IMG/VR virus record: IMGVR_UViG_3300046517_002304
Span: 248,001 to 312,000 of that record
Reading direction: 5' to 3' (one strand)
DNA: 64,000 nucleotides
The notes under the pieces were generated by a model, which was not told the origin of the DNA, ran no database searches, and worked only from the letters and a program-made list of their open reading frames with translations. This document shows, piece after piece, positions 12,594 through 63,207 of this stretch (its first letter is position 1; each line of letters begins with the position of its first letter). The translations under genes and the position numbers were made by a program.

Positions 12594-12791
12594 CTACGCC
12601 CAGGGACTTGACTTGATACGATTTTCGGCGGCTCGCAAAACGGCTGGCGTGCCAGTAAGACGATGGATAACTTCCTTCGCCTCTGCCTTTGTCATGCCGC
12701 CGATCATTCCGAGAATGCCATCGGGCATGTTCAGCGTTTTGCGGGCAACGCGGAGCTGGTGCTTTTCAGGGATACTTAGTTGTCGTGCCAT
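12594..12791 (-). CDS. Hypothetical protein
   Basis: ATG 10 nt after octamer. Confidence 0.7.
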   Translation of the reverse strand: MARQLSIPEKHQLRVARKTLNMPDGILGMIGGMTKAEAKEVIHRLTGTPAVLRAAENRIKSSPWA

Positions 12792-12801
12792 GCGGGGTAA
12801 T

Positions 12802-12949
12802 GGATAACTGCTCCCCGGCTAGTTATCCATATCTTAGGTACAGGGGAAACTATAAGAGTTAATAATTATAGTATCAGTACTTTAGCTATGGATAACTTAG
12901 AGGATCTCCGGGTAACGAAAACAGGGGGGACTTTCCCCCCTAGTTATCC
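12802..12949. repeat. Long intergenic element copy 1 (octamer pair + 77-bp IR-bounded unit + terminator)
   Basis: AGTTATCCATATCTTAGGTAC...TATGGATAACT then G6/C6 hairpin with A-tract. Confidence 0.8.
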
Positions 12950-12953
12950 CTGA

Positions 12954-13205
12954 TTAGTATTCGTCGAAGAATCCGTAGTCTTCGTCGGTCCCCATTCCGG
13001 CGCTGGTCATGGCCGAATCGTGGTCGCCATCCATATCTTCGCCGGGAATGTGGTCGTCGTCGGTCTGCTCTTCGTCTTCCAGAATTCCGACAGAGAGGAA
13101 CAGGCCAGTGGCAGCGTATGCCCGTACCAGCTTGACCGCTTCCTCTTCCGTGGCGACAACGTGCTCATGGCTGGCATTTTGCGTGCGACAGACGACAACT
13201 GGCAT
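12954..13205 (-). CDS. Hypothetical protein with acidic DGDHDSAMTSAG.GTDEDYG tail
   Basis: SD ACAGGAG before MPVVV. Confidence 0.7.
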   Translation of the reverse strand: MPVVVCRTQNASHEHVVATEEEAVKLVRAYAATGLFLSVGILEDEEQTDDDHIPGEDMDGDHDSAMTSAGMGTDEDYGFFDEY

Positions 13206-13254
13206 AGTCCTGTCTCCTGTAAGGGGGGTGCTGAATATAACAGGAGATGGATAA

Positions 13255-13467
13255 CTACGATTTGGCGAAACCGGCTCCGAGCGTCGTTTCAAATTCCCCG
13301 GCGGTCTTGCGGGTTTCGTGGTCCCAGATATAGCCGTAATCCATGTTCGGGCGATTCTGGAATTCGGCGAGGATACGACGGGCCTGTTCCATGCTTTCGG
13401 CGGGCAGAAACGAGATTGACGGCTTGCCCGGCGAAATTTTGCGATGGCCCACGACGGTGAGTTTCAT
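13255..13467 (-). CDS. Hypothetical protein
   Basis: Stop in octamer; AAGGA SD. Confidence 0.7.
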   Translation of the reverse strand: MKLTVVGHRKISPGKPSISFLPAESMEQARRILAEFQNRPNMDYGYIWDHETRKTAGEFETTLGAGFAKS

Positions 13468-13519
13468 AATTCGTTATCCTTTCAAAAATCGGGTGAAACT
13501 TACAACCGACTACGGATAA

Positions 13520-13717
13520 CTAACGGCTAATGCTCCCCGCGAGAAATCGCGTAAAGGGGTTGTGTGTCGTTTGCTGGATTTCTTCGAGGTCGGCCTTTGT
13601 TTCAGCGGCGATTCCCGATATGCGGGCATTGTCGGCGGCTGACATTTGATTTTTGTATCGGCGGGCGATTGACGTTACCTGAGTCAATGCCCGCAAGAGG
13701 TCAATCTGATCCCTCAT
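13520..13717 (-). CDS. Hypothetical protein
   Basis: ATGA-coupled; stop in octamer. Confidence 0.65.
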   Translation of the reverse strand: MRDQIDLLRALTQVTSIARRYKNQMSAADNARISGIAAETKADLEEIQQTTHNPFTRFLAGSISR

Positions 13718-14047
13718 TCTTGCATCGCTGCGATTGCAGCGGCCTTTCTAGTTCTCTGCCTACGCGGGCGGGTATCGTGAACGTGATGAGCGGTGCGGGT
13801 TTGATGACCGATAGCTACGTCAAGGTAGCCGATTTTTACGATCATCTTACGGGTTGACTTCTGTGCGGGGGTGTGCATAATTTCTAACGGATAACTAAGA
13901 CAGTCCGCACATTTTGCGGCTAAAGGAATTATCACGTTTAGGTGGCCTGAAGGAGAGCCAGGCATTCACGGCAACCCCGCGTGGGATTGGTTAACCCCAT
14001 GAATTGTTGTCCTATTATTCCCGACCCGTTTGCCGGTGCGGATTGTC

Positions 14048-14212
14048 TTAGGCGTCAACTTTCTTGATGTAATTGGATTCGAGATAAGCGTTTTTCATGG
14101 CATCCGTGTGGCCGTTGTCCCAGTGAATGATACACTCACCGTTGAGTTCATGCACCACGGTGCCCTTGAGGCCCTTCTCGTTTTGGAGGCGGTCACCCTT
14201 TTTTACATCCAT
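14048..14212 (-). CDS. Small SH3/KOW-like hypothetical protein
   Basis: SD ACAGGAG; GD....GTV...IHWDNG, similar to neighbour. Confidence 0.6.
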   Translation of the reverse strand: MDVKKGDRLQNEKGLKGTVVHELNGECIIHWDNGHTDAMKNAYLESNYIKKVDA

Positions 14213-14249
14213 TGTATACTCCTGTAAGAGACAAGAGTTAAAGGATAAC

Positions 14250-14459
14250 TCAGGCGGCACGCAATTCTTCAGCAACGCAGCCCTCTTCGTCGCCGTTATC
14301 CCATTGGACAGCGTAAATGCCGATGAAATTTCCCGGCACTCTGGCTACAATTTCGCCCCGCTTTGTTCCGTAATAATCCGTTACCCGTTGGCCGACTTCA
14401 AAAACGTATTGCATATTTGCTCCGAGGGTGCTGGTCGTAGCGAGACGTTTACGCCCCAT
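14250..14459 (-). CDS. Small SH3/KOW-like hypothetical protein
   Basis: FEVGQRV...GEIV...VQWDNG; stop in octamer. Confidence 0.6.
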   Translation of the reverse strand: MGRKRLATTSTLGANMQYVFEVGQRVTDYYGTKRGEIVARVPGNFIGIYAVQWDNGDEEGCVAEELRAA

Positions 14460-14687
14460 CTACTTTAATTCCCCCCACGTTGGAGTCCAGCGTTGCAGCG
14501 CTTACCCAATGGCGGGAGAAACTACAATCAGCGTTCCTAGGGATTACCCAGAAAAGTGAGAACATAGTAAACGAACGCGAAGAATCCGAAAATCAAGCTG
14601 CCGAATACGCCGCAGAAAACGGCCATTTCGGCGAATGGGACAATCCACTTGTCAACGAAGCGGTCCATCATGCCCCTCAAAGGATAA

Positions 14688-15071
14688 CTAACTGACGGTG
14701 TTGACGGTGATCGTCTTACGTCGCTTGCCGTTGAACGGGAGCAAGGTCACGAGAAATTCGTTGTGCCGCACGCCGCGAATGGAGTCAATAAAACCGCGAT
14801 GCTTGTTGTAGTAGAAGAGCCCGCCCTCAGACAGCTTTGCCATGAGCTGGCCGTTTGTCAGATTGCCGGGGGTCGGTTTGTTGCCGTCGTCGTTAATCAG
14901 CTTGACGATTTTCGGGATGACATCGTTATCCAAAAGACATGCTGAATCGCAGCGACTTTCAACGTCTGTCGGGTAGTTACAAACAATGTCCAGACTTTCG
15001 CCATACCGCCCGCCGATTTCAGTAAGGCGGATAATGCGATTGTCGTTAGTGATTTGGTTGTCGGCTCTCAT
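14688..15071 (-). CDS. Hypothetical protein
   Basis: Octamer-bounded ORF. Confidence 0.7.
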   Translation of the reverse strand: MRADNQITNDNRIIRLTEIGGRYGESLDIVCNYPTDVESRCDSACLLDNDVIPKIVKLINDDGNKPTPGNLTNGQLMAKLSEGGLFYYNKHRGFIDSIRGVRHNEFLVTLLPFNGKRRKTITVNTVS

Positions 15072-15105
15072 AATCGTTGTACCCTTTCAGGAACTAACGG
15101 ATAAC

Positions 15106-15345
15106 TTAGACCGCTTCCCCCCGACCGATCAGCCAATACCTATACTGGCCGTTCCGATATTCAATGACTGCGGAGCGGTCAATGTGGCTGGCATGGGTGA
15201 ACGCATGGTCGCGGCAATCGGCGAAACTGAAATCGGCAAGGCTTGGATTGACGACGAAGTAGTCAACGGCGATTGATTTGGGAGGAGCTGGCTTTGGCGG
15301 CGGGGACCATGAGCGGCGGTAGCCGTAATCGGTATATGGGTTCAT
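15106..15345 (-). CDS. Hypothetical protein
   Basis: ATG 10 nt after octamer; stop in octamer. Confidence 0.7.
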   Translation of the reverse strand: MNPYTDYGYRRSWSPPPKPAPPKSIAVDYFVVNPSLADFSFADCRDHAFTHASHIDRSAVIEYRNGQYRYWLIGRGEAV

Positions 15346-15355
15346 GGTTGTTAAT

Positions 15356-15510
15356 GGATAACTGCGGGGTGGGCTAGTTATCCATATCTTAGGTACGGGG
15401 AGAGTTTTGTTGTACTAGGATTTAACTAGTAGGTACCTAAGATATGGATAACTCTGGCGGTACGTGGCGAAAAGAAAAAACGCTCCCGTTTCGGGGAGCG
15501 TTAGTTATCC
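15356..15510. repeat. Long intergenic element copy 2 (perfect 21-bp IR, 15376-15396 / 15433-15453)
   Basis: AGTTATCCATATCTTAGGTAC and exact reverse complement; terminator at 15475-15502. Confidence 0.85.
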
Positions 15511-15521
15511 TTAGCTTTGGT

Positions 15522-15890
15522 CTATCGCAGATACTCGGGACCGTATTCGTTCATCCGTCCCATGCCCTTGCTGACGTCGTAGATGTTTCCTCTGGCGTGC
15601 TTCGCGGGGGCTTTCCACGTTGCGGGTTTCAGAATGTCGCCGTTGGCCTTGACGATGAAAGCGAAAGCTGAACCCCTGCAATCTCTGGCCCGTTCGCTGG
15701 CCCGCGATTTCCAGATGCGGACGTATTTGTTGCCGGGATCTTGGATCAACTCCTCCCGCTCCAGGGTCGGGAAGTGAGCCGCCATGTATTCATCAATTTT
15801 CTTCTGGTTATCCGCAACCCATTCCGTCAGTCGCTTCTGAAAGGTCGCGGCCTGTTCGTCGGCATGTCGCTGCAATTCGGCGGCATCCAT
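15522..15890 (-). CDS. Phage hypothetical protein (GDILKPATWKAPAKHARGNI motif)
   Basis: SD CAGGAG; motif familiar from T4-like phage hypotheticals. Confidence 0.75.
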   Translation of the reverse strand: MDAAELQRHADEQAATFQKRLTEWVADNQKKIDEYMAAHFPTLEREELIQDPGNKYVRIWKSRASERARDCRGSAFAFIVKANGDILKPATWKAPAKHARGNIYDVSKGMGRMNEYGPEYLR

Positions 15891-16320
15891 TGTATACTCC
15901 TGAGTAAGGTTGACAATGGGGAATGGATAACTAGCTGACCCGCACCAAGGCCCCACCGTTGCGAATGTCATGCCACGCGAAGCGAATGCCGTGCCGATCC
16001 AAAAATTCGGCGAAGCGAATTGCTCCCAGCGGGTGATTGAACAGGAACGAACGACCGATCCGACGAAAGCTAAGTTTATCCATCTGAGTTATCCTCTTGA
16101 GGAAAATGGACTCACTCTGGATTACGGATAACTAAACGTGCGGCATGTCGTGTGGAGTCAGTATTGCCCACCGGGCTAGGTGGTCCCGCTCCCAGTCTAT
16201 ACGCCGAACGCCTAGTTATAAAAACGAATGGATAACTAAGCAAGTGAGGACGCCAAAATCGTTTTGTCCCTTTCGGAAGATTGCCGATCTGGCTATGTCT
16301 CTTGCCTAGTTATCCGTAGC

Positions 16321-16518
16321 TTAGTTCTGGCGATACTTCGCAATCGCCGAGGCCATCGCGTCGTCAACGGTGCTGCCAGCGGCTACTGCTTCGCGGGTTT
16401 CGCTGAAGATTTTGCTGAGGTCAAACATCATCACCTCAACGCCGTTCCCAAGGCGGCTGTAGGCGTTGTCAATGCTGTCGTCCAACTGCTTTTCGGCTTT
16501 CGTCCTACGTTTCGCCAC
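16321..16518 (-). CDS. Hypothetical protein
   Basis: GTG start with ACAGGAG SD. Confidence 0.65.
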   Translation of the reverse strand: MAKRRTKAEKQLDDSIDNAYSRLGNGVEVMMFDLSKIFSETREAVAAGSTVDDAMASAIAKYRQN

Positions 16519-16561
16519 GATACTCTCCTGTAAGGGGTGACTGATGAGAGTTAAAGGATAA

Positions 16562-16849
16562 CTAGCCGACAGTGAACAGCGGTCGGGTGTATTCCGCCAT
16601 GACCGCCTTATCACTCTGGCGAACGATACGGGCAGCGGAAACTGTCGTCGGGCCGAGATGTTTGTTGCCGCCGGTGCGAGTTGATTCCTCAAAAGCAGCG
16701 ACGTATTTCCGCAAGTTATCCGCAGTCGGTTGACCGTCGCCAGGGACTTGCTCTTGCGGCGATTTTCGCAGTCGCCATTCGCAAGGCGTGTAGATGAAGC
16801 CGGGAACCTTAATCTCAACCGTGAAAGGAATCGCTCTTGATCGTCCCAT
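16562..16849 (-). CDS. Hypothetical protein
   Basis: SD ACAGGAG; stop in octamer. Confidence 0.75.
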   Translation of the reverse strand: MGRSRAIPFTVEIKVPGFIYTPCEWRLRKSPQEQVPGDGQPTADNLRKYVAAFEESTRTGGNKHLGPTTVSAARIVRQSDKAVMAEYTRPLFTVG

Positions 16850-16884
16850 GATAATCTCCTGTTAAGACAGGGAGAAATGGATAA

Positions 16885-17094
16885 CTATTCGCTGATTGTT
16901 TGCGTGTAGGGGATTTCCCCTAATGATTGGAGAATTTCCTCCGCAAGCACATTGCCGGCGTCAGCTCTGAGTTTCAACCCGCCGGCGATCAAGGCAAGTT
17001 TTCCGAGCGACAGGCCAGTAATTTCGTAAAGGTCGTACGCTCCCTTGATTAGTCCCTTAGTTTTCGTCAGTCCTAGCTTTTGCCCTTTCTTCAT
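16885..17094 (-). CDS. Hypothetical protein
   Basis: SD ACAGGAG; stop in octamer. Confidence 0.7.
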   Translation of the reverse strand: MKKGQKLGLTKTKGLIKGAYDLYEITGLSLGKLALIAGGLKLRADAGNVLAEEILQSLGEIPYTQTISE

Positions 17095-17271
17095 GGTATC
17101 TCCTGTGAGAGAAAATTATAAGACTGCCCGTGTTTTCGTCCGCGACAGCACCGCAATGCCGCCAACTGCCTCACCGACCGTTGCCGGGTAATCCGTGGTC
17201 TAGAACACACGACGTTCTACTTCCACGGGCCAGGTTTAGGAGCCTGTTGTCTTACGGTCGGATATGGATAA

Positions 17272-17463
17272 CTAGATGATCGGCATTGAAACCGTGCTGC
17301 CCTTGATTTCCGTGTCAACGATCTTGATATGATTGTTCGGACAATCCAAAGTGAAATTGTAGTCACAATCGGTCGCTGCCATATCGCCCGCGACTTCAGG
17401 TGAAAATACGTGCGGGTGTTCAATGTCAACCGCGACGACAAAGTAAACGCGGGATTTCAGCAT
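17272..17463 (-). CDS. Hypothetical protein
   Basis: SD AAGGAG; stop in octamer. Confidence 0.7.
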   Translation of the reverse strand: MLKSRVYFVVAVDIEHPHVFSPEVAGDMAATDCDYNFTLDCPNNHIKIVDTEIKGSTVSMPII

Positions 17464-17472
17464 GACGCTCCT

Positions 17473-17850
17473 TTATTCGTTTGAGTAACTCAAATCGTCG
17501 CTTGGCTGAAGTTGATTCCAGATATGCCCGCAATTTTCGCATGATTCACCATGCAACGCGGACTCAGGAATCGGCTCTTGACAGTCGGGACATTCGCCCT
17601 TATCATATTCGTTTCGGACGAGATCAGACGGAACCCAAGTCAGACGTTTGGGGAATGGTTTTTTATCACGGAAGCAAAGGATTCGTAAATCGCCCGATGC
17701 CTGACTTTTTGCAGAGGCAAGCGTAGGTGCCCAGTCCTGCCGATTAGTCCCGACTTTGTAACTCCAAAATGGAACAATGCCAGGCGTAGCAATCGGTTGC
17801 TGCCAGATTGTGCATTCGTAGTTCAGGTGTTTGGCGGTATACTGGAGCAT
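17473..17850 (-). CDS. Protein with C-terminal CxxC-CxxC zinc ribbon
   Basis: CPDC...CENC; ATG 10 nt after octamer. Confidence 0.7.
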   Translation of the reverse strand: MLQYTAKHLNYECTIWQQPIATPGIVPFWSYKVGTNRQDWAPTLASAKSQASGDLRILCFRDKKPFPKRLTWVPSDLVRNEYDKGECPDCQEPIPESALHGESCENCGHIWNQLQPSDDLSYSNE

Positions 17851-17860
17851 ACGATTTAAT

Positions 17861-18003
17861 GGATAACTCATCGCCGCCTAGTTATCCATATCTTAGGTAC
17901 GCAGAGAGTTTTGTTGTACTAGGATTTAACTAGTAGGTACTCTAGCTATGGATAACTAGACCTATCAGCTAGGCCAAAAAAATTGGCCCGGGTTTTCCGG
18001 GCC
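17861..18003. repeat. Long intergenic element copy 3
   Basis: 78-bp unit 17880-17957 near-identical to 15376-15453; terminator hairpin follows. Confidence 0.85.
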
Positions 18004-18282
18004 TTGTCCTATTCACCTTGCAGGTTATCCCCCTGATAAGCGGCGTAGCTCTTCTCATCGTGCCAAGTCAGCTTGACCGCACGGCAGGTCGTGAAATCGT
18101 GGTTCCAGAAAAAATCGTAATAGCGGGGGGTGAGATTTCGGTGTTCCCCGCGAGCAAATTGCTCCGCAGTGAATTCAATCATACCGGTTATCCTTTTAAT
18201 CGGGTGAAACTTACAACCGATTACGGATAACTAGAATGACCCTCCCTAGGTATCACTAGGGAGGGTCGGAGGGACGAACGCA

Positions 18283-18753
18283 TCAGGCAGCGGACTTGTC
18301 GGTCTTCTTCTTCGCGGGTTTCTTCGCAGCGACGGCTTTCGTCTTCGCGGCACGCGGCTTGCGGGGTTTGGCGGGTTTCGGGGTTTCGGCGACAGGTGCC
18401 GGCGGTTCAGGGGCGAGCGGTTCAACGGTCGGGGCGTCGTCCACCACAACGGCAGGCTTTCGCTTGCGTTGACGCGGGGCGGTCGGAAGGGCGACGGATT
18501 CGCCAACGGTCGGGATGATCTTTTCGCAGTCCAGTTGCACGCGGACACAATCGGTATCGTGATAGACTTCCAGCACCTTGCACTGAATGCCCATCCAGAC
18601 AGCGGCGGCCAGGCGGAAGAGATTCAGTCGGCCCTTATGGTCGCGGGACAACTCAACGCCGGTGATCGTGGTATCCTTTCGGTCACGAAACTTCAACTGC
18701 GGTTCTACCACCACTTCGCGGGGCTTTTCCTGTTCCTCAACTTCCATACGCAT
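18283..18753 (-). CDS. Protein with Pro/Lys/Ala-rich histone-like tail
   Basis: KPAKPRKPRAAKTKAVAAKKPAKKK. Confidence 0.7.
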   Translation of the reverse strand: MRMEVEEQEKPREVVVEPQLKFRDRKDTTITGVELSRDHKGRLNLFRLAAAVWMGIQCKVLEVYHDTDCVRVQLDCEKIIPTVGESVALPTAPRQRKRKPAVVVDDAPTVEPLAPEPPAPVAETPKPAKPRKPRAAKTKAVAAKKPAKKKTDKSAA

Positions 18754-18933
18754 CGCATACTCCTTAGAGAAGGGGGATTGTTGATTGTTAAGGGATAACT
18801 AACGCCAGTTAGGTGCCACTTCGGTCAACTGGACTACCTCGCACTCTATAGGACTTCGCGGGTGCATGGACGGTCGCAGGCGATTTCAACAGGCCCGCGT
18901 GCGTCTCGGTTAGTTACAACAATGAATGGATAA

Positions 18934-19122
18934 CTAGAAGCTGGATTTTCGTTCGTCCTGAGGCTTCGGCGGCATCGTCAGGCCATCCTGAAAAATCGCC
19001 CGACTTCGCAGCCATTGCAGCATTCCCTTCCAGCGTTCGGGGGGGATATGGTCGGGGCAACCGAAATCGTATCTGGTACATACCAGAAACGAATCAAGGT
19101 TCATTTTGCTGCAATCAATCAT
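18934..19122 (-). CDS. Hypothetical protein
   Basis: Octamer-bounded ORF. Confidence 0.55.
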   Translation of the reverse strand: MIDCSKMNLDSFLVCTRYDFGCPDHIPPERWKGMLQWLRSRAIFQDGLTMPPKPQDERKSSF

Positions 19123-46652: not shown

Positions 46653-46653
46653 T

Positions 46654-56383: not shown

Positions 56384-56683
56384 TTACTTCACAAAAAACC
56401 ATTGTGCGGCGATGCACACCACAATGCTGCTTATGACACCAAGTAAGATGCATGCAAACACCCCTATTTGAGCTGCGCCTGTGATGGCATTCCAAAAATC
56501 CTCCCCAAACCATTGGGTGCCTCTTCCCAGCAAACAAGAATAATTCTTAGAATAGGCTATCTTGCCTGGCATGGAATCATTTGTTTCTTTCCACTCAATA
56601 ATTTCTCTGAATCCAGCTCCAATTTCTGCGATGATATAAAGAATAAAAGCAAGAAGGAAAAGAGCCAGTGGAAGGTAAAACAT
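56384..56683 (-). CDS. Membrane protein
   Basis: Two hydrophobic segments. Confidence 0.6.
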   Translation of the reverse strand: MFYLPLALFLLAFILYIIAEIGAGFREIIEWKETNDSMPGKIAYSKNYSCLLGRGTQWFGEDFWNAITGAAQIGVFACILLGVISSIVVCIAAQWFFVK

Positions 56684-56905
56684 TTTGTTTCTTTCTGAAA
56701 GTTAAAGGAATTCTGTGCAGGACCGCAATTAGCCCTGCACAGAATTGTCCACACTATGTTTTATCTATCATTCGCTGAACCACAGCACGACAGCGAACTA
56801 TACCGGCATGCGTATTTAGTGTCGCTGAATCCCAGTCTGTATTCATGCCGGAGAACACAGAAGATTGCTAGACTCAACAACGATCTTTTTATGTGATAGG
56901 GATAA

Positions 56906-57127
56906 CTAATAAAGCAGACTCAACACAAATAAAAGGAGTAAAACTGCGGACGCCATAAAAAACCAGTCATTTAATTTTTGGTATGACTTATGTTTTAGGA
57001 CTGCATTTTTTTTATCTTTGCACCAAATATAAGTTGCATCCCGAAAAAACCTCTCGGCAGACCTACCAAATGATACATTCAAAGCAATACTGACACATAG
57101 CAACATGAGTATGATATAGGCCAGCAT
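56906..57127 (-). CDS. Membrane protein
   Basis: Two TM segments; stop in octamer. Confidence 0.6.
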   Translation of the reverse strand: MLAYIILMLLCVSIALNVSFGRSAERFFRDATYIWCKDKKNAVLKHKSYQKLNDWFFMASAVLLLLFVLSLLY

Positions 57128-57132
57128 CAGCG

Positions 57133-57486
57133 CTACTCAATTACGTGTGTTTGACCCCGACCTTGCTTGCCGTGATTCCAGTTTGCACCATTAATATCTT
57201 GCACTGAATGAATATGAAATTCCATATTATAATAATAGTGATTTCCTCGTTCTCCTTTAAACCACATTGACTTGCCTTCTGGAACATCTTGTATGAAAGT
57301 GATGGGCGGTTCGCTATCATACGGGTCAATTCTGTAAAGCTTTAGCTTGTCGCCATCGGCCACCAGAACGGAAAATGTACGTACGTCATGCATAAAAAGA
57401 CGCTCAAAATTAAACTGGTCTACTACATGAGGAGGAGCATAAACACATCCCACAACCAACAGCAGCAGTGGAAGAAAACATTTCAT
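57133..57486 (-). CDS. Putative lipoprotein
   Basis: Lipobox-like LVVGC. Confidence 0.65.
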   Translation of the reverse strand: MKCFLPLLLLVVGCVYAPPHVVDQFNFERLFMHDVRTFSVLVADGDKLKLYRIDPYDSEPPITFIQDVPEGKSMWFKGERGNHYYYNMEFHIHSVQDINGANWNHGKQGRGQTHVIE

Positions 57487-57496
57487 GATTTGTTTC

Positions 57497-57808
57497 TTAT
57501 ATTGAGAAATCGGGTTCGTAAACTTCTGTTTGCTTATTTATAGAGCCATCCAGCACATCTTGAAAATCTCTCGCAATATTAATTTGCTCATATTTAATCT
57601 CCATAATCTTATCGCAGCAATCTCTGAGTTTATAAAAACTAATACCAGTTCGTTGCCTAAGAGCGTCGTTCAGTACGCCCATATCACAGATATTGACGCC
57701 AAGGTCTTCAATCTGATTAGCAGCACTGTTTAGGCATGCTACCAGTTTATCTAATCTTCTGATAGAGTCCCAGCTAATAACATCGCGTATATGATACTTA
57801 GGTCGCAT
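57497..57808 (-). CDS. Hypothetical protein
   Basis: 103-aa ORF. Confidence 0.65.
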   Translation of the reverse strand: MRPKYHIRDVISWDSIRRLDKLVACLNSAANQIEDLGVNICDMGVLNDALRQRTGISFYKLRDCCDKIMEIKYEQINIARDFQDVLDGSINKQTEVYEPDFSI

Positions 57809-57987
57809 TAGATGTACCGAACAGGTCGGATTGCGTCAACGATGAACGGAGCAAGAAACATGGCAAAACAACCCCAAAAGAAGTTGACTTCTCCACCGCG
57901 CAAGCACCACATGATGGGACCGCCAATCAGTCCCATAGCAAGACCTTGCCAAAGTGTCTTCCAGCCAATGCATCCAGTTGTCATGAT

Positions 57988-58248
57988 TCAATCTTTCAGT
58001 TGAAATTTATCAAACATCAACAAACATTCCAACTTGTTTTTTGTATCATTCATAATATTGCCGCAACCTAAACTAATTGCAGCAGTTGACAATGCGGCCA
58101 AAGCACCAGCAGCATCGTTGCCTTCAAGGCATTCCCACTGAACACTCTGGTTATTCCAGATTTCTTTCGGGAGGCCAATGCCATCGGCCCACATACGGAA
58201 CCAGATATCGATTTGTTCAACTCGTTCAGGAGTAGCTGGAGGCATCAT
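57988..58248 (-). CDS. Hypothetical protein
   Basis: AAGGA SD. Confidence 0.65.
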   Translation of the reverse strand: MMPPATPERVEQIDIWFRMWADGIGLPKEIWNNQSVQWECLEGNDAAGALAALSTAAISLGCGNIMNDTKNKLECLLMFDKFQLKD

Positions 58249-58267
58249 GGTTTTCCTTTATTGTAAG

Positions 58268-58351
58268 TGCCGGAAGAGGGATTTGAACCCACACACCCCG
58301 AAGGATACGACATTTTAAGTGTCGTGCGGCTGCCAATTACGCCATTCCGGC
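58268..58351 (-). tRNA. tRNA-Leu(TAA)
   Basis: GCCGGAA/TTCCGGC acceptor, CTTAAAA loop, long variable arm, TTCAAAT T-loop. Confidence 0.9.
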
Positions 58352-58364
58352 CTGTTTCGTCCGC

Positions 58365-58553
58365 TTAATCCTTTTCCCCTAACGGCGAAATATCCCACCA
58401 AAACCGTACGCCAAAAAATATAGCAACCATTGTGATTGAAGTAATAAGAAACTCAAGTTTACCGATTTGAGCATCATGATAGTGTGTAATCCAGATAGCG
58501 CCGCACTGTGCAGAGAAAAGAGCCAGTGCAACATCTCTAATAGTTCTTTTCAT
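58365..58553 (-). CDS. Small membrane protein
   Basis: Two TM segments; similar to 60491-60685. Confidence 0.55.
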   Translation of the reverse strand: MKRTIRDVALALFSAQCGAIWITHYHDAQIGKLEFLITSITMVAIFFGVRFWWDISPLGEKD

Positions 58554-58738
58554 GATTTGTTCCAGTTATTTATTAAACTAGTTTTGCAACAATAAACATT
58601 CACAAAAGCGAGCCAGAGCGGAGAACTAGAAACCACAAAGACTACTGCTGCTATTGAGTTTATTGCCGGGTCTGTACGCTAGGCTAGCATACTTTTCAGT
58701 AGCTTGCTTCGGTCAGGTGAATGCCTATGGATAACTAA

Positions 58739-59041
58739 CTACTTTGAATCTTTTTCCATCTTTCCTTGCGACCAGCCGTTAAGCCACAAAGCGGCCTCAG
58801 CCGTCTTATCGCCGTGCCATGCACTAGATGCGCGTTGCCACGGATTTGCTTCCGACGATGCGCCAGCACGACCAGCTAACTTACCAGATTCAAAAATAGA
58901 ATTTACATAAGCCTGTTGTTTGGCCGCTCTGTTTTCTGCCTCAATTTGACTCCCGCGAAGATGGATGTGAAGGCAACCGCCGACGCACAATAAGCCAATT
59001 ATCCAAAAGATTATTTTCTTCATTTTATTTCTCCACCACAA
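58739..59041 (-). CDS. Membrane-anchored Rmf-like protein
   Basis: TM + SIFESGKLAGRAG...NPW...WLNGW. Confidence 0.6.
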   Translation of the reverse strand: MWWRNKMKKIIFWIIGLLCVGGCLHIHLRGSQIEAENRAAKQQAYVNSIFESGKLAGRAGASSEANPWQRASSAWHGDKTAEAALWLNGWSQGKMEKDSK

Positions 59042-59064
59042 AGAATGCCAACTGCGAACTCAAC

Positions 59065-59298
59065 TCAAATAGCTTCACCGATATCTGATAGCATTCTTAT
59101 TTTTACATTTACTCCACCATCTAATAGCTTCTTTACCCATCTTTCGCTGCGGCCAATTCTTTGGGCCAACTGTAAATTAGTGATATGTTTCTCTTGCATA
59201 ATCTCACAAATTACTTCAGTAACATCAAGAATTAACTTTTCTTGGAAGAAAAGCTTTTTGTATTTTTCGCTTGTCCTAATAATCATTACGGCACCCAT
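59065..59298 (-). CDS. XRE-like helix-turn-helix protein
   Basis: ITNLQLAQRIGRSERWVKKLL. Confidence 0.6.
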   Translation of the reverse strand: MGAVMIIRTSEKYKKLFFQEKLILDVTEVICEIMQEKHITNLQLAQRIGRSERWVKKLLDGGVNVKIRMLSDIGEAI

Positions 59299-59696
59299 TT
59301 AGTTCTGGAAGCAGGATGGCTATCATAAGTTCTAATGTAATAATCATCCTTTTCCTTACCAGGAGCCTTTGTGGGAGCAGGCGATACTTTACCACGAGGC
59401 GGGGGAGATACGTCATTTGCCAATGAACCAAGGAAGAACATGCCAAAAATTATAGTTAATATAAAACAACTGCCAGCCAAACAGCCATAACTTTCAGCGT
59501 GCGAACGATACTCATTCCACTTAACTGTGCCGCTTTTAGCGGTAGCTGATTTATAGACTCCATTATGCCAGTCCAGCTTTACTGTTGAATCATACGATTT
59601 ATTAGAAAGCTGCTGCCTGTTGTACTGCATTTTCCAAAAAGTAGCGGTCAATGCGAGAAGAACCAGCACTACCATTCCGATAATAGCGGTCATCAT
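59286..59696 (-). CDS. Membrane protein
   Basis: Two TM segments. Confidence 0.65.
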   Translation of the reverse strand: MMTAIIGMVVLVLLALTATFWKMQYNRQQLSNKSYDSTVKLDWHNGVYKSATAKSGTVKWNEYRSHAESYGCLAGSCFILTIIFGMFFLGSLANDVSPPPRGKVSPAPTKAPGKEKDDYYIRTYDSHPASRTKWVP

Positions 59697-59905
59697 TGTG
59701 GCACCTTCTCTTTTAAGATATGGTATTCAGTGCCGCCCAACTCCTTATAAAGATTGCGAACTTTGCGATAGAGAAGAATAAGCTGAGTATCCATGGTTGC
59801 TGAAGTGCCTTGGTCGTTGCGGAATCCATAATGGCGATCCCATAACTCTTCTGTTCTAGAGAGAGTTTTGTGCAACTCAGCGGTAATTTGTTTTTTAGTT
59901 CTCAT
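59693..59905 (-). CDS. Hypothetical protein
   Basis: ATGA-coupled. Confidence 0.6.
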   Translation of the reverse strand: MRTKKQITAELHKTLSRTEELWDRHYGFRNDQGTSATMDTQLILLYRKVRNLYKELGGTEYHILKEKVPQ

Positions 59906-60091
59906 TAATATTCTTTCTTACAGCCCGGACAAACCGTATCCTTGCGAGAAATGATTTCGGCATGAGCCTCGCAATACCAAACACAATGCTTGCCACACGC
60001 ATACATTACTGTAGCAGTGCTACGGCATCCGCCTGGGGCCGCACATATTCTTCTCTTAGGAGTTTTCTTTTTCATAAGATTTAAAGGATAA

Positions 60092-60400
60092 CTAGAAAGC
60101 GAACCTAGCGGTCAAGACTTCAAGATGACGCATACCGCTCAACTCTTCGTCATCATCGTCAATACCAATCCCCTCATCAAATTCTTCGCTATCTTCATCA
60201 ATATCGTCGTCGTCAAACTCATCGTCTTCATCATCAAACTCGTCGCTTTCAAATAATTCGTCGTCGTCTTCGTCATCAAAATCGTCTTCATCTTGATCGT
60301 CAAAGTCAATATCGTCTTCGTCAATTTCGCCGAAGTCTTCGTCTTCTTCGTTAATTTCATTAACGAGCAAATCAAGTTCATCGGGATTAGGATTGCTCAT
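60092..60400 (-). CDS. Extremely acidic Asp/Glu-rich protein
   Basis: Long D/E runs with periodic F/I/L; stop in octamer. Confidence 0.7.
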   Translation of the reverse strand: MSNPNPDELDLLVNEINEEDEDFGEIDEDDIDFDDQDEDDFDDEDDDELFESDEFDDEDDEFDDDDIDEDSEEFDEGIGIDDDDEELSGMRHLEVLTARFAF

Positions 60401-60490
60401 GATTTCATTCCTTTTGGTGTACGATGGGGAAGGTGCGGGCCGAACGGGAATGTATCCCTGATATCCAACCGTTCCTTACCCCATTTATTT

Positions 60491-60685
60491 TTACTTAGAA
60501 TTGTCAAACAATAGTTTGAAAAACCACCTCACCACATAAAAAACAATAATTATAAAAGCCGAACACCATAAATAATCACCCTTGCCCACTTTTACATCTT
60601 GGTATCCCAAGACCATTACGGCCCCAATTACGCCGGCAAGAATAGCCAGCAAGGTATCTTTGAAAAACTGTGCAACATTCATCAT
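60491..60685 (-). CDS. Small membrane protein
   Basis: Two TM segments. Confidence 0.55.
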   Translation of the reverse strand: MMNVAQFFKDTLLAILAGVIGAVMVLGYQDVKVGKGDYLWCSAFIIIVFYVVRWFFKLLFDNSK

Positions 60686-60837
60686 GATGATTTTTCCTTT
60701 ATGGATTGTGATGGATAACTAAAAACAAAAAGCTATCCCGACTGCGACGATTGCCAGAAGCCACACAGAAATCATAATGGCTACAAAAGAATAGGCAAGC
60801 AACATTCCTAATCCGTAATATGAAAAGTTAGGGTTTT

Positions 60838-61041
60838 TCATATTACGCAATCAATCTCTATAACGGAACCGACAATACATTTGACTTCCCATAGGTTAAA
60901 CTCAAAGTTGTTTACAGAAAACCCGCCAAGAGTAAGGTCAGCCAGCTCACCCTTCATCAATATCTGTGCTTGACTATTAATTAGGGCAACTTTAGCCTTT
61001 TTTAACTTCAAAAGTTGCTCATAGATTTGCTTGGAAGGCAT
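60838..61041 (-). CDS. Hypothetical protein
   Basis: ATG 10 nt after octamer. Confidence 0.6.
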   Translation of the reverse strand: MPSKQIYEQLLKLKKAKVALINSQAQILMKGELADLTLGGFSVNNFEFNLWEVKCIVGSVIEIDCVI

Positions 61042-61082
61042 ATTTGCCTATGGATAACTAAAATTATATACTATCTTATAGT

Positions 61083-61302
61083 ATGTTCAAAGTAGAGCGG
61101 CATCATATCAAAGAAAATCCTGAAATTATACGTCTTTGCACGCTCAGTAAGGAGTTGTATAACAAGTGTAATTACTACAAAAGTAATCCAGGACAGTGAA
61201 TTTCTTGCTCAACTGGATAGGAGCCTTGTCGCAAGGCCAAAAGTAGTTAATCCATTAAAATCTAGTTGCGTAAAACGGCAGCTAGAGGGTTATATTGCTT
61301 AA
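61083..61302 (+). mobile_element. Internally deleted tnpB (IS200/IS605-type) remnant
   Basis: MFKVERHHIK...LCTLSKELYNKCNYY joined out of frame to KVIQD...DRSLVARPKVVNP; downstream hairpin. Confidence 0.55.
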
Positions 61303-61345
61303 ACTGAGTTATTAATATTACTTAGAACGATAACTAAATAATTAT

Positions 61346-62146
61346 ATGCGTTTTTCCGAATTCTTAGATGAAATGGCGTTCAGCACTGGAGTAGTGCCAA
61401 ATGAACACAAACAGCTATTGCAATTTGATGACACCGATAAACAATTATATCAATGGGCTAAAGCAAAGTTTAATGCTGTTGCTGCGGCTAAAGTTATATT
61501 AGCCAGATATGGATATTTAAGGCCAGACCTACAGCAAAAGGCGATAGAATCTGGCGTTTACTTTAAAGACATAAATGAAAATGTACCAGGCAGTCCAGGA
61601 ATTCTAGTTTTTAAAAATAAAGAGTTTCCGATACAGTCTAATATCAGAGAATTAAGAAACAGAATCAAAGACCAAATACCGCTGCTTACTAGATGGGGAG
61701 GCCGCGCACCTTCAGCAAAGACAGGCATAGATTATGATAGGTTGAGTAAGGGCTTCCAGCTCAACTATCACGCAAAAGCCGATTATTCTAATAATGAGTT
61801 ATGGCAATCAATTATTAAGGCCGATGGGTCAAGGTGTAATTCTCAAGAAGAGTTCAAACAAGAATTTACAAACCCGCACGCTCTTAATTTTAATATGAAA
61901 TTAGGGAGTACTCACGTTGACCACGATCAAATCATAAGGTTGATTAATGATCGGATCAAAAGTAAATTTGGGTCAGTCGCTCCCCCGGGGGATATTAAGA
62001 AAGTATTAGATTATTTATACCTTAACCTCGGCAAGATCGCCAGCAATAGCGGTACAATTCAGTCATCTATCGGAGCCGTTTTTAGGGACTGGGAATATAA
62101 AAATTCTGGGGACAAAGGCAGCTACACGCCTAACTACATCCCATAA
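61346..62146 (+). CDS. Putative late/virion-internal protein
   Basis: TAAATA 5 nt upstream; N-terminal MRFSEFLDE. Confidence 0.7.
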   Translation: MRFSEFLDEMAFSTGVVPNEHKQLLQFDDTDKQLYQWAKAKFNAVAAAKVILARYGYLRPDLQQKAIESGVYFKDINENVPGSPGILVFKNKEFPIQSNIRELRNRIKDQIPLLTRWGGRAPSAKTGIDYDRLSKGFQLNYHAKADYSNNELWQSIIKADGSRCNSQEEFKQEFTNPHALNFNMKLGSTHVDHDQIIRLINDRIKSKFGSVAPPGDIKKVLDYLYLNLGKIASNSGTIQSSIGAVFRDWEYKNSGDKGSYTPNYIP

Positions 62147-62298
62147 GCGTAATCGTTCAGTCCACCGATTTCTACTCCACGCTTGCCCCTAATAAGCATC
62201 GCTTTCCGCTCTCTCCGCGAAAGGACGGGAACGTAAACTAAAATCCACTCGCCCTTATGGGCTGGTTTTCGCTTTTTGCGTTTTATGATTGGCACGAT

Positions 62299-62556
62299 TC
62301 ACCATCCCCACAGAACATTATGGATTAAATATATAGCCAATGCCGGCCCTTCCATTATTAAAAAGAAAAGGCTAATGGTTAGACACCAAGCGTACATGTC
62401 TTCATTAATATAATTCAGAGTATTTTCAAACTTATACTTATAATACCATGCCGTAAGAGCAAATAGTGCCGCCACAAAGGCAAATACTATCATTGCTGCA
62501 ACTGCTAGTGGCATTGTGGGCGCTGTTCTTCTGCTTGTTTGATCCAAGTAGAGCAA
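62299..62556 (-). CDS. Membrane protein
   Basis: Two TM segments. Confidence 0.55.
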   Translation of the reverse strand: MLYLDQTSRRTAPTMPLAVAAMIVFAFVAALFALTAWYYKYKFENTLNYINEDMYAWCLTISLFFLIMEGPALAIYLIHNVLWGW

Positions 62557-62665
62557 TAGCCGATGCTATCATCATCATGCCAGCATGACCGTACTTTGCC
62601 AATCCAGTACATCACAAGGATATCACTGGATTGTTTGGCAACAGCTTCGCAATATTGCCAAAAAC

Positions 62666-62965
62666 TCACTTAACTTCCTCTACCAAGAGGATTTCTTCGT
62701 CCGGCTGCTCTTCAGTAATTCGATCTCTTGCATGTTTCTTAGACACACACTGGAGAACAAAATACTTGCCGGATTTTGTTTCAATTCGCCAAGGGGCAGA
62801 CTTAGAAAGCCCTTCAATGTTAGCCTTCTTGGGTTCCGCTTCAACGGCGACAGGAGCCGCCACCTCAACTGCTTTCTTCTTCATTGTTTTCCTTACATGA
62901 ACTTCGGTGCCATTTTCGGTTGTCTGGCTACCAGATGCGGTTTCAGAACCTTTTTTCTTCATCAT
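62666..62965 (-). CDS. Hypothetical protein
   Basis: ATG 10 nt after octamer. Confidence 0.7.
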   Translation of the reverse strand: MMKKKGSETASGSQTTENGTEVHVRKTMKKKAVEVAAPVAVEAEPKKANIEGLSKSAPWRIETKSGKYFVLQCVSKKHARDRITEEQPDEEILLVEEVK

Positions 62966-63207
62966 GTCTTTCTATGGATAACTAAGGTTTGATTTTAAAA
63001 ACAATCATTCGGCTAATCCGCAAGTATCCCGGTGTTGCCACCCTGGTTTCACAGAGCTTAACCGAACAATTGTCTTATGTCTTTTTTGGCTTCGGCCACT
63101 TCAGATCTGCGGAATTCACAACCCCTTTACCCCGCCATTTTCCCTGAAGTCGGTCCCACAGTCGCCACTTGTCTCCATCCCGACGCATAATAAATCTGAT
63201 TTTCATC

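What the first reader, a model, noticed from the sequence alone, without database searches (positions are those of the whole stretch)
12791..62983. Fixed 10-nt motif-to-ATG spacing without SD suggests a new promoter class for leaderless mRNAs
Seen: about 29 genes start exactly 10 nt after AGTTATCC with no SD. Examples are ATGs at 12791, 13878, 15345, 17850, 21618, 22217, 31196, 31501, 34210, 35518, 38475, 39273, 39808, 40203, 40671, 41577, 41935, 43022, 43767, 45251, 47282, 49128, 51243, 52148, 52809, 61041, 62965. The spacer is AT-rich (e.g. TTTAACAATT, GTAATCAATT, ATTAGACATT). When the motif is farther upstream (~25-45 nt), a strong SD such as ACAGGAG or AAGGA is present. The motif also precedes tRNA-Arg. 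Inference: a -18..-11 promoter element, unlike sigma70 or T4 late consensus, read by a phage sigma factor, RNA polymerase or activator.
Basis: partly seen in the sequence, partly recalled or inferred. Interest (0 to 1): 0.85.

Follow-up and report, generated by a model that had tools for sequence, protein, structure and literature searches.

The report
Invariant megaphage promoter making leaderless mRNAs
An uncultivated 511-kb soil phage puts an invariant 8-base signal (AGTTATCC) in front of nearly every small gene unit, placed so that transcription most likely starts exactly on, or 3 bases before, the start codon. It is a real and unusually clean phage-specific promoter system, but the enzyme that reads it is unknown and no RNA data exist.

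Summary
AGTTATCC occurs 133 times in the window against 1.7 expected. 114 copies lie on the coding (minus) strand, and 1-mismatch variants are at chance level. All 27 cited starts check out, and 36 ATGs sit exactly 10 nt after the motif. These starts lack Shine-Dalgarno (SD) pairing; units with 15-60-nt leaders have strong SD.

New evidence: copies with no nearby ATG still carry a pyrimidine-purine step at +10 (75% against about 20% background). This marks +10 as the likely transcription start. Predicted leaders are 0 nt (41 units), 3 nt (13 units) or at least 15 nt with SD. Nothing is conserved upstream. Strong terminators are followed by the motif within 5-27 nt. The motif also precedes tRNA-Arg and non-coding stretches.

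Three relatives (44-58% helicase identity) use the same 8-mer and geometry.

Best reading (about 0.7): a compact phage-specific promoter that gives leaderless or near-leaderless mRNAs. Its layout resembles T7, phiKZ/AR9 virion-polymerase and T4 late promoters, but its sequence is new. No polymerase or sigma factor was found, and no RNA run was listed.

The repeats also act as recombination joints that shuffle gene cassettes, as PeSLs do in T4-type phages. I class it as a new variant of a known kind.

The parts
11674..63573 (-). Array of 113 co-oriented exact copies of AGTTATCC (extended form t-AGTTATCC-n-T-w-a), about one per 1.4 genes. It heads units of 1-5 small, often ATGA-coupled genes. 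One further copy at 2605-2612 lies inside an ORF and is probably chance.
39271..39291 (-). Typical leaderless unit. The TAG stop of the upstream gene overlaps the motif (39284-39291), followed by the 10-nt spacer GTAATCAATT and the ATG at 39273. The intergenic distance is 16 nt and there is no SD. It is one of 36 such units; the others have ATGs at 12791, 13878, 14671, 15345, 17850, 21618, 22217, 30473, 30946, 31196, 31501, 31874, 32477, 34210, 35518, 36176, 37542, 38475, 39808, 40203, 40671, 41577, 41935, 43022, 43346, 43767, 45251, 47282, 49128, 51243, 52148, 52809, 60075, 61041 and 62965.
46167..46190 (-). Unit with 13-nt spacing. After the motif comes GTTAGATTA-CA-TC-ATG, so the predicted start A (position +10) gives a 3-nt leader. 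Other cases have ATGs at 38721, 19698 and 19122.
23449..23493 (-). SD-led unit. The motif is followed by TTTAACTTT-CG (the Y-R step at +10), a leader with SD CAGGAG, and the ATG at 23451, 34 nt after the motif.
29539..29584 (-). Terminator-promoter composite. A 13-bp G+C-rich hairpin (29584-29554) and T-run are followed after 7 nt by the motif (29539-29546). Similar composites have terminators ending at 18238, 17985, 15479, 12922 and 22352, and there is a hairpin at 52833-52860 directly before the motif at 52820-52827.
24615..24733 (-). Motif (24706-24713) lies 16 nt upstream of tRNA-Arg(TCT), so the predicted start is 6 nt before the mature 5' end. This copy is the 3' arm of a 12-bp palindrome (24706-24733) whose other arm is a plus-strand copy.
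27590..27641 (-). Junction of a split UvrD-type helicase (N half 28605-27640, C half 27590-26802). It reads TAG stop + motif + CA at +10 + SD AAAGGA + ATG. The same split with the same motif is present in relatives L043 and L044; relative L368 has an unsplit gene.
28654..29546 (-). Seven motif copies in 0.9 kb (29546, 29406, 29289, 29042, 28784, 28704, 28654), most of them heading short stretches without ORFs. These are candidate small non-coding transcripts, and none matches Rfam.
17861..17957 (-). Inverted-repeat module of the form AGTTATCCATAGCTAGAGTAC - about 43 nt - GTACCTAAGATATGGATAACT - 11 nt - AGTTATCC - 10 nt - ATG. Copies lie at 12802-12897, 15356-15453, 17861-17957 and 22228-22324, with partial ones at 23.9, 26.5, 19.1, 19.7, 21.1 and 24.7 kb. 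These modules hold most of the 19 reverse-strand copies, which lack the Y-R step and lead no ORF. Their role is unresolved.
61041..61059 (-). Motif + 10 nt + ATG placed directly after the only clear opposite-strand gene (61346-62146, plus strand).
41588..41597 (-). Recombination joint. In DNA run X3 a contig joins ..41597 to 52830.. (an 11.2-kb deletion type). Other contigs join ..43364 to 31215.. and ..50847 to 44366.. (duplication, circle or other gene order). All three joints lie in the shared motif plus spacer, which is 14-24 nt long.

Best explanation
AGTTATCC, with the T two bases downstream and a weak A/T-rich stretch after it, is the core of a compact promoter that is specific to this phage lineage. 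It occupies -19 to -7 relative to a transcription start fixed 10 nt after the 8-mer. The start itself shows a pyrimidine(-1)/purine(+1)/T(+2) initiator pattern.

The promoter has no -35 or upstream part, so it fits between the stop codon of one gene (TAG or TGA overlapping the motif) and the next start.
- In about 30% of units the +1 A is the A of the ATG, giving a true leaderless mRNA.
- In about 10% the ATG follows after 3 nt.
- In the rest the leader is at least 15 nt long and carries a strong SD.

What is shown: the motif, its strand bias, its all-or-none conservation, the spacing peaks, the lack of SD, the Y-R step, the terminator-motif composites, and conservation in relatives.

I put that second point at roughly 60:40, based on the strict invariance and the absence of -35/-10-like sequence.

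A secondary consequence is that the many identical copies serve as joints for recombination that shuffles gene cassettes.
For: - Abundance and invariance. 133 copies against 1.7 expected. 114 perfect copies on the coding strand against 15 single-mismatch variants, which is chance level.
- Restriction to one gene class. There are at least 149 co-oriented copies across record positions 259-401 kb of the 511-kb contig. There is none in the 10 kb left of the window and only two in window 1-11.4 kb: one inside an ORF and one plus-strand copy at the block's edge.
- Spacing. First ATG at exactly 10 nt in 39 of 136 copies (p = 4e-35), and the base before those ATGs is always C or T.
- Initiator step. 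In copies with no ATG within 17 nt, a Y-R step sits at positions 17-18 in 43 of 57, against 2-46% at every other offset from 8 to 31 (median about 20%). The pairs vary (CA, TG, TA, CG) over varied spacers. Pooled figure: 63 of 95 against a background of 0.24, p = 5e-18.
- Leader lengths. Predicted leaders are bimodal: 0 nt (41), 3 nt (13), almost none between 5 and 14 nt, then 15-56 nt with SD.
- Terminators. Six of eight strong coding-strand terminators are followed by the motif within 5-27 nt.
- No other promoter signal. Sigma-70-like matches are not enriched (29 against 21.9 +/- 4.9, and 31 against 39.5 +/- 6.1), and nothing is conserved from -55 to -3.
- Non-coding targets. The motif precedes tRNA-Arg and ORF-free stretches, so its function is not translational.
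- Relatives. Three relatives from other samples (helicase 58, 57 and 44% identical) carry 11, 31 and 10 copies in 5.8, 12.9 and 4.7 kb. They have T at position 9 in 51 of 52 copies and Y-R at +10 in 35 of 52. Orthologous helicase promoters keep CA or TA at +10 while the spacers differ.
- Negative control. About 300 unrelated loci fetched by other searches show no clustering: up to 3 copies each among those tallied, and only single pattern matches in the later genome scan.
- Precedent for the geometry. AR9 and phiKZ virion-polymerase promoters are a highly conserved block followed by 6 nt and then the start, and they are intolerant of single mismatches (PMC5312081).
Against: - No transcript data. 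No RNA run was listed, and read laying could only use DNA contigs. The start site is therefore inferred from sequence statistics alone.
- No RNA polymerase, sigma factor or known transcription factor was found in about 150 kb of this genome or in the relatives' contigs. About 70% of the genome was not inspected.
- In the 32-52 kb stretch there are almost no terminators. Units there would also be read through from upstream, which a processing model explains equally well.
- A few copies sit 0-4 nt from a plausible ATG (37310, 36821, 34838, 41194). A start at +10 would exclude that ATG from the transcript.
- The reverse-strand copies and the inverted-repeat modules are not explained by the promoter model.
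Confidence: 0.7

Rival explanations
1. RNA processing site. Long polycistronic transcripts are cut by a sequence-specific (phage or host) endoribonuclease 10 nt after AGUUAUCC, between the pyrimidine and the purine. This would release mRNAs that begin at or just before AUG.
For: - Fixed distance and a Y-R step at one position.
- All-or-none 8-mer.
- Very few terminators in 32-52 kb, so long precursors are plausible.
- Units abut with no room for a classical promoter.
Against: - The motif follows strong terminators within 5-27 nt in 6 of 8 cases, where there would be little precursor left to cut.
- No other promoter signal exists to make the precursors.
- No shared secondary structure surrounds the site, and only about 10 copies lie in a hairpin.
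- A copy stands directly after the only clear opposite-strand gene.
Confidence: 0.1
2. The motif is a promoter read by the unmodified host RNA polymerase with a host sigma factor (housekeeping or alternative) of an unknown soil bacterium. In that case it is not a phage-specific system.
For: - Early genes of many phages use host holoenzyme, for example T4-type PeSL promoters (PMC2839356).
- No phage polymerase or sigma factor was found (the many annotation calls listed above).
Against: - Host promoters are degenerate, whereas here 1-mismatch variants are at chance level.
- There is no -35, no TANNNT-like hexamer at -12 to -7, and no UP element.
- The adjacent part of the same phage genome lacks the motif altogether.
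Confidence: 0.1
3. The primary function is at DNA level. The motif would be a site for site-specific recombination or cassette exchange (integron-like), or for another DNA transaction, and its fixed position relative to starts would be secondary.
For: - Three contigs of run X3 join flanks of different motif copies exactly at the motif: one deletion type and two duplication/circle types.
- The array consists of same-oriented ORFan cassettes.
- Inverted pairs GGATAACT-N11-AGTTATCC exist.
Against: - The joints share 14-24 nt (motif plus similar spacer), so ordinary recombination between short repeats is enough, as for PeSLs.
- GTTATCC does not fit the integron core GTTRRRY, and most copies have no palindrome.
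- No integrase was seen.
- This model does not explain the exact 10/13-nt spacing to ATG, the SD dichotomy, or the Y-R step in SD-led units.
Confidence: 0.05
4. Translation signal. AGUUAUCC in the mRNA would recruit ribosomes (a non-SD ribosome-binding site) or promote termination-reinitiation across the 16-nt gap.
For: - Fixed 10-nt distance to ATG without SD.
- The stop codon of the upstream gene overlaps the motif.
Against: - Two thirds of copies are 15-60 nt or more from the start, and those starts have their own strong SD.
- Copies precede a tRNA and non-coding stretches.
- The 8-mer is pyrimidine-rich at its 3' end and cannot pair with the CCUCC anti-SD (read directly from the sequence).
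- The Y-R conservation at +10 in SD-led units has no role in this model.
Confidence: 0.03

Closest known systems
Virion-RNA-polymerase (early) promoters of phiKZ-like jumbo phages, e.g. AR9 AAATATATATTAT-(6N)-G+1 (PMC5312081; phiKZ: PMC8244752)
   Same: - A highly conserved block about 13 nt long, no -35, and a start a fixed 6 nt after the block. Here the block ends at motif position 11 and the predicted start is at position 18.
- Intolerance of single mismatches.
- Dozens of copies in front of early genes of a very large phage.
   Different: - Those motifs are purely A/T-rich, while this one has an invariant G and CC.
- AR9 leaders are 26-491 nt and phiKZ had no leaderless transcript, whereas about 40% of leaders here are 0-3 nt.
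- No split beta/beta' polymerase genes were found in the parts of the genome inspected.
T7-type single-subunit RNA polymerase promoters (from established knowledge: conserved -17 to +6, A/T-rich -4 to -1, purine start)
   Same: - A near-invariant upstream recognition block, an A/T-rich stretch just before the start, and a purine at +1.
- Many copies through a gene-dense genome, with read-through between units.
   Different: - Shorter (about 13 against 23 conserved positions).
- No conservation after +2.
- No T7-like polymerase gene was found. The genome was only partly inspected.
T4 late promoters (TATAAATA read by gp55; from established knowledge)
   Same: - An 8-bp element is sufficient, with no -35.
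- The element is conserved across very divergent relatives.
- One relative (L043) has a T4-type major head protein gene next to its motif array (phrog_138).
   Different: - The sequence is unrelated, and the element lies further upstream (-18 to -11, against about -13 to -6).
- It heads ORFan-type small genes and auxiliary genes rather than known structural genes.
- gp55/gp33 homologues were not found.
Leaderless-gene promoter signature of Actinobacteria and Deinococcus-Thermus (TANNNT about 12 bp before the start codon; PMC3160421, PMC12340547) and the extended -10 middle/late promoters of Thermus phage P23-45 (PMC7403470)
   Same: A promoter element lies at a fixed distance from the start codon, SD is absent, and +1 falls on the A of ATG.
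   Different: - The element here is not a -10 hexamer of the housekeeping sigma factor.
- It is invariant rather than degenerate.
- It serves SD-led units equally.
PeSL regulatory cassettes of T4-type phages (PMC2839356, PMC4122927)
   Same: - A repeated promoter, often just after a stem-loop terminator, flanks ORFans in hyperplastic regions.
- Recombination between copies gives deletions, replacements and circles. Joints at the motif were seen here in run X3.
   Different: - PeSL promoters are sigma-70 consensus promoters with -35 and UP elements, which are absent here.
- Most copies in 30-64 kb have no stem-loop.

Membership tests
Sigma-70-type (housekeeping) promoter | -35 hexamer and -10 TATAAT-like hexamer 16-18 bp apart, with degenerate matches | tested here: not met
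   There is no information content from -55 to -3 of the motif. Consensus matches are not enriched (29 against 21.9 +/- 4.9, and 31 against 39.5 +/- 6.1). The positions equivalent to -12 to -7 read CCnTWA. Variants of the 8-mer are at chance level.
Phage-polymerase promoter (T7-type or phiKZ/AR9 virion-polymerase type) | Compact, near-invariant element with the start a fixed few bases downstream | tested here: met
   The invariant 8-mer plus T is followed by a Y-R step fixed at +10. The conserved block ends 6 nt before the step. This geometry was compared with PMC5312081. The start itself is inferred, not measured.
Phage-polymerase promoter (T7-type or phiKZ/AR9 virion-polymerase type) | The genome encodes the cognate polymerase | tested here: inconclusive
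   No polymerase domain was found among proteins of about 150 kb inspected (Pfam, PHROGs and precomputed Pfam). A 750-aa ORFan gave nothing. About 70% of the 511-kb contig remains unseen.
Phage-polymerase promoter (T7-type or phiKZ/AR9 virion-polymerase type) | Primary (triphosphate) 5' ends at the predicted start | not testable with these tools
   No RNA run was listed. Only DNA contigs were available.
T4 late promoter | TATAAATA at about -10, read by gp55/gp33 | tested here: not met
   The motif sequence is unrelated. No gp55-like protein was found among those scanned with PHROGs.
Leaderless mRNA genes | Promoter element at a fixed distance from the start codon, no SD, and +1 on the start codon | tested here: met
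   There are 36 window starts at exactly 10 nt with median SD energy +0.6 kcal/mol, against -2.2 at random positions. This follows the criterion of PMC3160421. Transcript ends were not measured.
PeSL cassette (T4-type phages) | Sigma-70 early promoter joined to a stem-loop terminator | tested here: not met
   Terminator-motif composites exist at 6 or more sites, but the promoter part is not sigma-70-like. Most copies lack a stem-loop.
PeSL cassette (T4-type phages) | Recombination between copies shuffles flanked ORFans | tested here: met
   Three joints between different motif copies appear in contigs of run X3. Each rests on a single contig.
Integron attC site | Imperfect palindrome with core sites RYYYAAC / GTTRRRY, plus an integrase | tested here: not met
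   GTTATCC does not fit GTTRRRY. Only about 10 of 114 copies have an inverted partner. No integrase was found among the proteins scanned.
DnaA box | TTATCCACA (TTWTNCACA) | tested here: not met
   TTATCC matches, but the 8th box position is T in 112 of 114 copies where the box needs C. Strand bias and spacing to ATG are unrelated to replication. The lead came from PMC11317965.
Structured RNA processing site (RNase III, Cas6-type) | Conserved hairpin at the cleavage site | tested here: not met
   There is no conserved complement near most copies and no Rfam match other than tRNAs.

The most novel reading that the evidence does not exclude
A lineage of soil megaphages carries its own, still unidentified, transcription apparatus with an invariant 8-bp promoter. 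That promoter is positioned so that more than 50 early units are expressed as leaderless or 3-nt-leader mRNAs, next to SD-led ones. This would amount to a built-in two-mode translation programme, possibly used to favour phage messages when host initiation is altered. The same element would double as the joint for cassette shuffling of a unidirectional gene array more than 140 kb long.
Probability: 0.3. Interest if true: 0.8.

Novelty: new variant of a known kind. Interest (0 to 1): 0.6.

Why it matters
Promoters of uncultivated huge phages are essentially unknown. Here the sequence alone yields a complete, testable transcription map: at least 149 predicted starts, each to the nucleotide.

If the starts are confirmed, this would be the largest set of leaderless mRNAs described for a phage outside Thermus. 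It would offer a clean system for asking how a virus mixes leaderless and SD-dependent initiation.

The invariant 8-mer is also useful in three practical ways:
- as a marker for finding members of this phage lineage in metagenomes;
- as a guide for correcting gene starts (for example, the topoisomerase gene in L368);
- as bait for identifying the polymerase or factor that reads it.

The recombination joints at the motif show how such arrays of ORFans are reshuffled.

Tried and rejected
- **Stop-codon recoding.** I considered it because few ORFs are long. I rejected it: the minus strand is fully tiled by small ATGA-coupled ORFs under the standard code.
- **Known phages.** Megablast of 12 kb found no match. 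tblastn of the helicase gave at most 36% identity.
- **Literature search for the 8-mer.** It returned only primers and DnaA-box contexts. The DnaA box was rejected because position 8 is T, not C.
- **RNA evidence.** No RNA run was listed. Read laying on four DNA runs showed no base variants, so no population-level conservation test was possible.
- **Search for the polymerase:**
  - Pfam and PHROGs on about 70 proteins, plus precomputed Pfam hits for about 150 kb of the contig;
  - PDB sequence search and ESM Atlas on a 750-aa ORFan;
  
  Nothing was found.
- **Metagenome scan with a helicase alignment.** It returned only distant helicases (39% identity or less) without the motif.
- **Genome-collection scan with the motif-ATG pattern.** It returned only single chance matches and no host clue.
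- **Masking of SD by the motif** (GGATAAC in leaders pairing with it). Five of 136 leaders against about 3 expected, so not significant.
- **Rfam.** Only the three tRNAs.

Full report
**Source and setting.** The window is positions 248,001-312,000 of a 511,233-bp viral contig from a soil/rhizosphere metagenome (IMGVR_UViG_3300046517_002304, which is jgi Ga0495630_0000004). No cultured phage resembles it. From about 11.5 kb to the end of the window, and on for at least another 29 kb, the minus strand is tiled with small genes of typically 45-150 aa. Many are coupled by ATGA overlaps, and almost all are ORFans. The same orientation continues to at least record position 401 kb. Three tRNA genes lie in the array.

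**The observation.** AGTTATCC occurs 133 times against 1.7 expected, and 114 copies are on the coding strand. The first ATG falls at exactly 10 nt in 35 of 114 copies. In 92.8 kb of contiguous sequence the count is 39 of 136, against a background probability of 0.018 (p = 4e-35). These starts pair with the anti-SD more weakly than random positions do (median +0.6 against -2.2 kcal/mol). Starts 15-60 nt from the motif have strong SD (median -5.6).

**Anatomy of the element.**
- The conserved element is t-AGTTATCC-n-T-w-a, with T at the 10th position in 112 of 114 copies.
- Nothing is conserved from -55 to -3, and A+T content there is at background.
- The motif is all-or-none: 114 perfect copies against 15 single-mismatch variants on the coding strand, where about 23 are expected by chance.
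- The upstream gene's stop codon usually overlaps the motif (TAG-TTATCC or TGA-GTTATCC). The standard junction is therefore stop - motif - 10 nt - ATG, only 16 nt between genes.

**New evidence for a fixed start.** Among the 57 copies with no ATG within 17 nt, a pyrimidine-purine step lies at positions 17-18, so the purine is 10 nt after the 8-mer, in 75%. At other offsets the figure ranges from 2 to 46%, with a median of about 20%. The step is spelled in different ways (CA, TG, TA, CG) over otherwise varied spacers. Pooled over 95 copies that lack the 10-nt ATG, it is present in 63, against a background of 0.24 (p = 5e-18). In the 10-nt class the base before the ATG is C or T in 35 of 35. Position +10 is therefore special whether or not a start codon is there, and Y(-1)R(+1) is the usual signature of a transcription start. 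Measured from that purine, leaders are 0 nt (41 units), 3 nt (13 units), almost never 5-14 nt, and otherwise 15-56 nt with SD. This is what one expects if messages must either be (near-)leaderless or have room for an SD.

**Transcription rather than translation or processing.**
- The motif stands 16 nt before tRNA-Arg, so the predicted start is 6 nt before the mature end.
- It heads several ORF-free stretches at 28.6-29.6 kb.
- Six of eight strong coding-strand terminators are followed by the motif within 5-27 nt. Another hairpin directly precedes the copy at 52,827.
- A copy stands directly after the only clear opposite-strand gene.
- Sigma-70-like promoters are not enriched, so the motif is the only candidate promoter after those terminators.
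- Most copies have no hairpin, which argues against a structured processing site.

A processing model remains possible for the terminator-poor 32-52 kb stretch, and I give it 0.1.

**Distribution and relatives.**
- The 10 kb to the left of the window has no copy, and window 1-11.4 kb has only two: one inside an ORF and one plus-strand copy at the block's edge. This region holds glycosyl- and nucleotidyl-transferases and a 24-gene paralogue array.
- The motif block runs through at least record positions 259-341 kb. Copies recur, always co-oriented with genes, at 380-401 kb and in another 20-kb piece that holds RNA-repair and NAD-related genes.
- The UvrD-type helicase is split into two ORFs with a motif at the junction.
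- Its closest homologues come from three other samples: L044 (58% identical, split), L043 (57%, split) and L368 (44%, unsplit). They carry 11, 31 and 10 copies of the same 8-mer in 5.8, 12.9 and 4.7 kb.
- In those relatives T is at position 9 in 51 of 52 copies, Y-R is at +10 in 35 of 52, and the ATG spacing again peaks at 10 nt.
- Orthologous helicase promoters keep CA or TA at +10 while their spacers differ.

The element thus belongs to a lineage, which implies a conserved reader.

**What reads it.** I could not find out. About 150 kb of the genome and the relatives' contigs contain no recognisable polymerase, sigma factor or transcription factor. The layout consists of a near-invariant block from -19 to -7, an A/T-rich -6 to -1, a purine start, and no tolerance of mismatches. 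It parallels T7-type promoters and the virion-polymerase promoters of phiKZ-like phages: AR9 has AAATATATATTAT-6N-G+1, and a single mismatch abolishes use (PMC5312081). It is unlike degenerate host promoters. I therefore favour a phage-encoded or phage-modified polymerase at about 60:40 over host holoenzyme. This is inference only.

**Comparison with what is known.** Phage-specific compact promoters are well known. So are leaderless phage and bacterial mRNAs recognised by a promoter element at a fixed distance from the start codon (PMC3160421; PMC7403470). phiKZ and AR9, the best-studied giant phages, have long leaders and no leaderless transcripts. What is new here is:
- the sequence itself;
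- its invariance over at least 149 copies and four genomes;
- the packing of promoter, stop codon and start codon into 16 nt;
- the 0 / 3 / 15-or-more-nt leader pattern.

I rate it a new variant of a known kind.

**Recombination at the motif.** Laying DNA contigs of four runs on 38.4-44.4 kb gave no base differences. However, run X3 holds three contigs that join flanks of different motif copies exactly at the motif: 41,597 to 52,830, 43,364 to 31,215, and 50,847 to 44,366. The shared sequence is 14-24 nt, shorter than the assembler's word length as I recall it (31 nt; not stated by any tool), so these are unlikely to be graph artefacts. This mirrors PeSL-mediated shuffling and mini-circles in T4-type phages (PMC2839356, PMC4122927). 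I treat it as a consequence of many identical promoters, not as their primary role.

**Unresolved.** The 19 reverse-strand copies are nearly all confined to the G+C-richer 12-27 kb part. They are arms of inverted repeats, either GGATAACT-N11-AGTTATCC or 21-bp arms sharing a TACCTAAGA core. They lack the Y-R step and lead no ORF. Relative L043 has a related hairpin, GATACCTAAGAA..TTAGGTATC, just upstream of eight motif copies. These may be regulatory or terminator elements of the same system; I could not tell.

Noticed in passing
window 4386-11074 (-): Tandem array of 24 paralogous small genes (about 80-106 aa, 24-65% identical, mostly starting MKAEV.. or MK..), nearly all joined by ATGA overlaps. 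The array has no AGTTATCC motif and no Pfam or PHROG match.
   Followed up: partly
window 26802-28605 (-); L043 1931-3672; L044 866-2620; L368 2679-4334: A UvrD-type helicase with an N-terminal Zn-ribbon is split into two ORFs by a 50-nt insert that carries a stop codon, the motif, an SD and an ATG. The split is shared by relatives at 57-58% identity but is absent at 44% identity. This looks like an internal promoter fixed inside a formerly single gene.
   Followed up: yes
window 41597/52830, 43364/31215, 50847/44366 (run X3): Contigs from one soil run join different motif copies. One joint is an 11.2-kb deletion type and two are 'backward' joints (duplication, circle or another gene order). 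This indicates cassette shuffling at the repeated element.
   Followed up: partly
window 12802-12897, 15356-15453, 17861-17957, 22228-22324 (also 23.9 and 26.5 kb); L043 about 1400-9400: Modules of about 95 nt have 21-bp inverted arms (AGTTATCCATAGCTAGAGTAC / GTACCTAAGATATGGATAACT) around about 43 nt, placed between a terminator and a leaderless gene. Relative L043 has a related 9-bp hairpin with the same ACCTAAGA core 5-10 nt upstream of eight motif copies. Their function is unknown.
   Followed up: partly
window 28654-29546 and 33180-33763 (-): Motif-headed stretches of 50-300 nt have no ORF and could be small non-coding RNAs. None matches Rfam. Within 29233-29290 a 27-nt segment (catcaggaaaaccatgaaaaaacgaac) is directly duplicated at a gene start.
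   Followed up: partly
window 12000-64000: G+C content falls steadily from 52% (12-16 kb) to 40% (60-64 kb) along one co-oriented gene array. The G+C-rich part has mostly SD-led units with a recurring leader (..CTTACAGGAGTATACA-ATG) plus all the inverted repeats. The 30-52 kb part has mostly leaderless units and almost no terminators.
   Followed up: no
L045 1-9600 (record about 238-248 kb, left of the window): This cluster holds two nucleotide-sugar transferase-like proteins (PF03407), a glycosyltransferase and a metallophosphatase, with large ORFans of 704 and 449 aa. It may be DNA or surface modification machinery. The region carries no motif.
   Followed up: no
L366 and L369 (other parts of the same genome): Motif-led regions encode:
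- nicotinamide phosphoribosyltransferase, NADAR and an MGS-like protein;
- RNA ligase and RNA 2'-phosphotransferase (Tpt1);
- an Apyc1-like metallo-beta-lactamase-fold protein;
- a SET-domain protein, methionine aminopeptidase and YqeY;
- HNH and LAGLIDADG endonucleases.

This is a counter-defence and RNA-repair type repertoire.
   Followed up: no
L368 597-1490: The called start of a type IB topoisomerase gene lies upstream of a motif whose +10 ATG (at 651) is in position to be the real start. The motif can be used to correct gene starts in this lineage.
   Followed up: no
window 49797-50816 (-): A 339-aa protein has an N-terminal prepilin-type methylation motif (PF07963, at threshold). It is an unusual passenger in a phage early-type array.
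   Followed up: no
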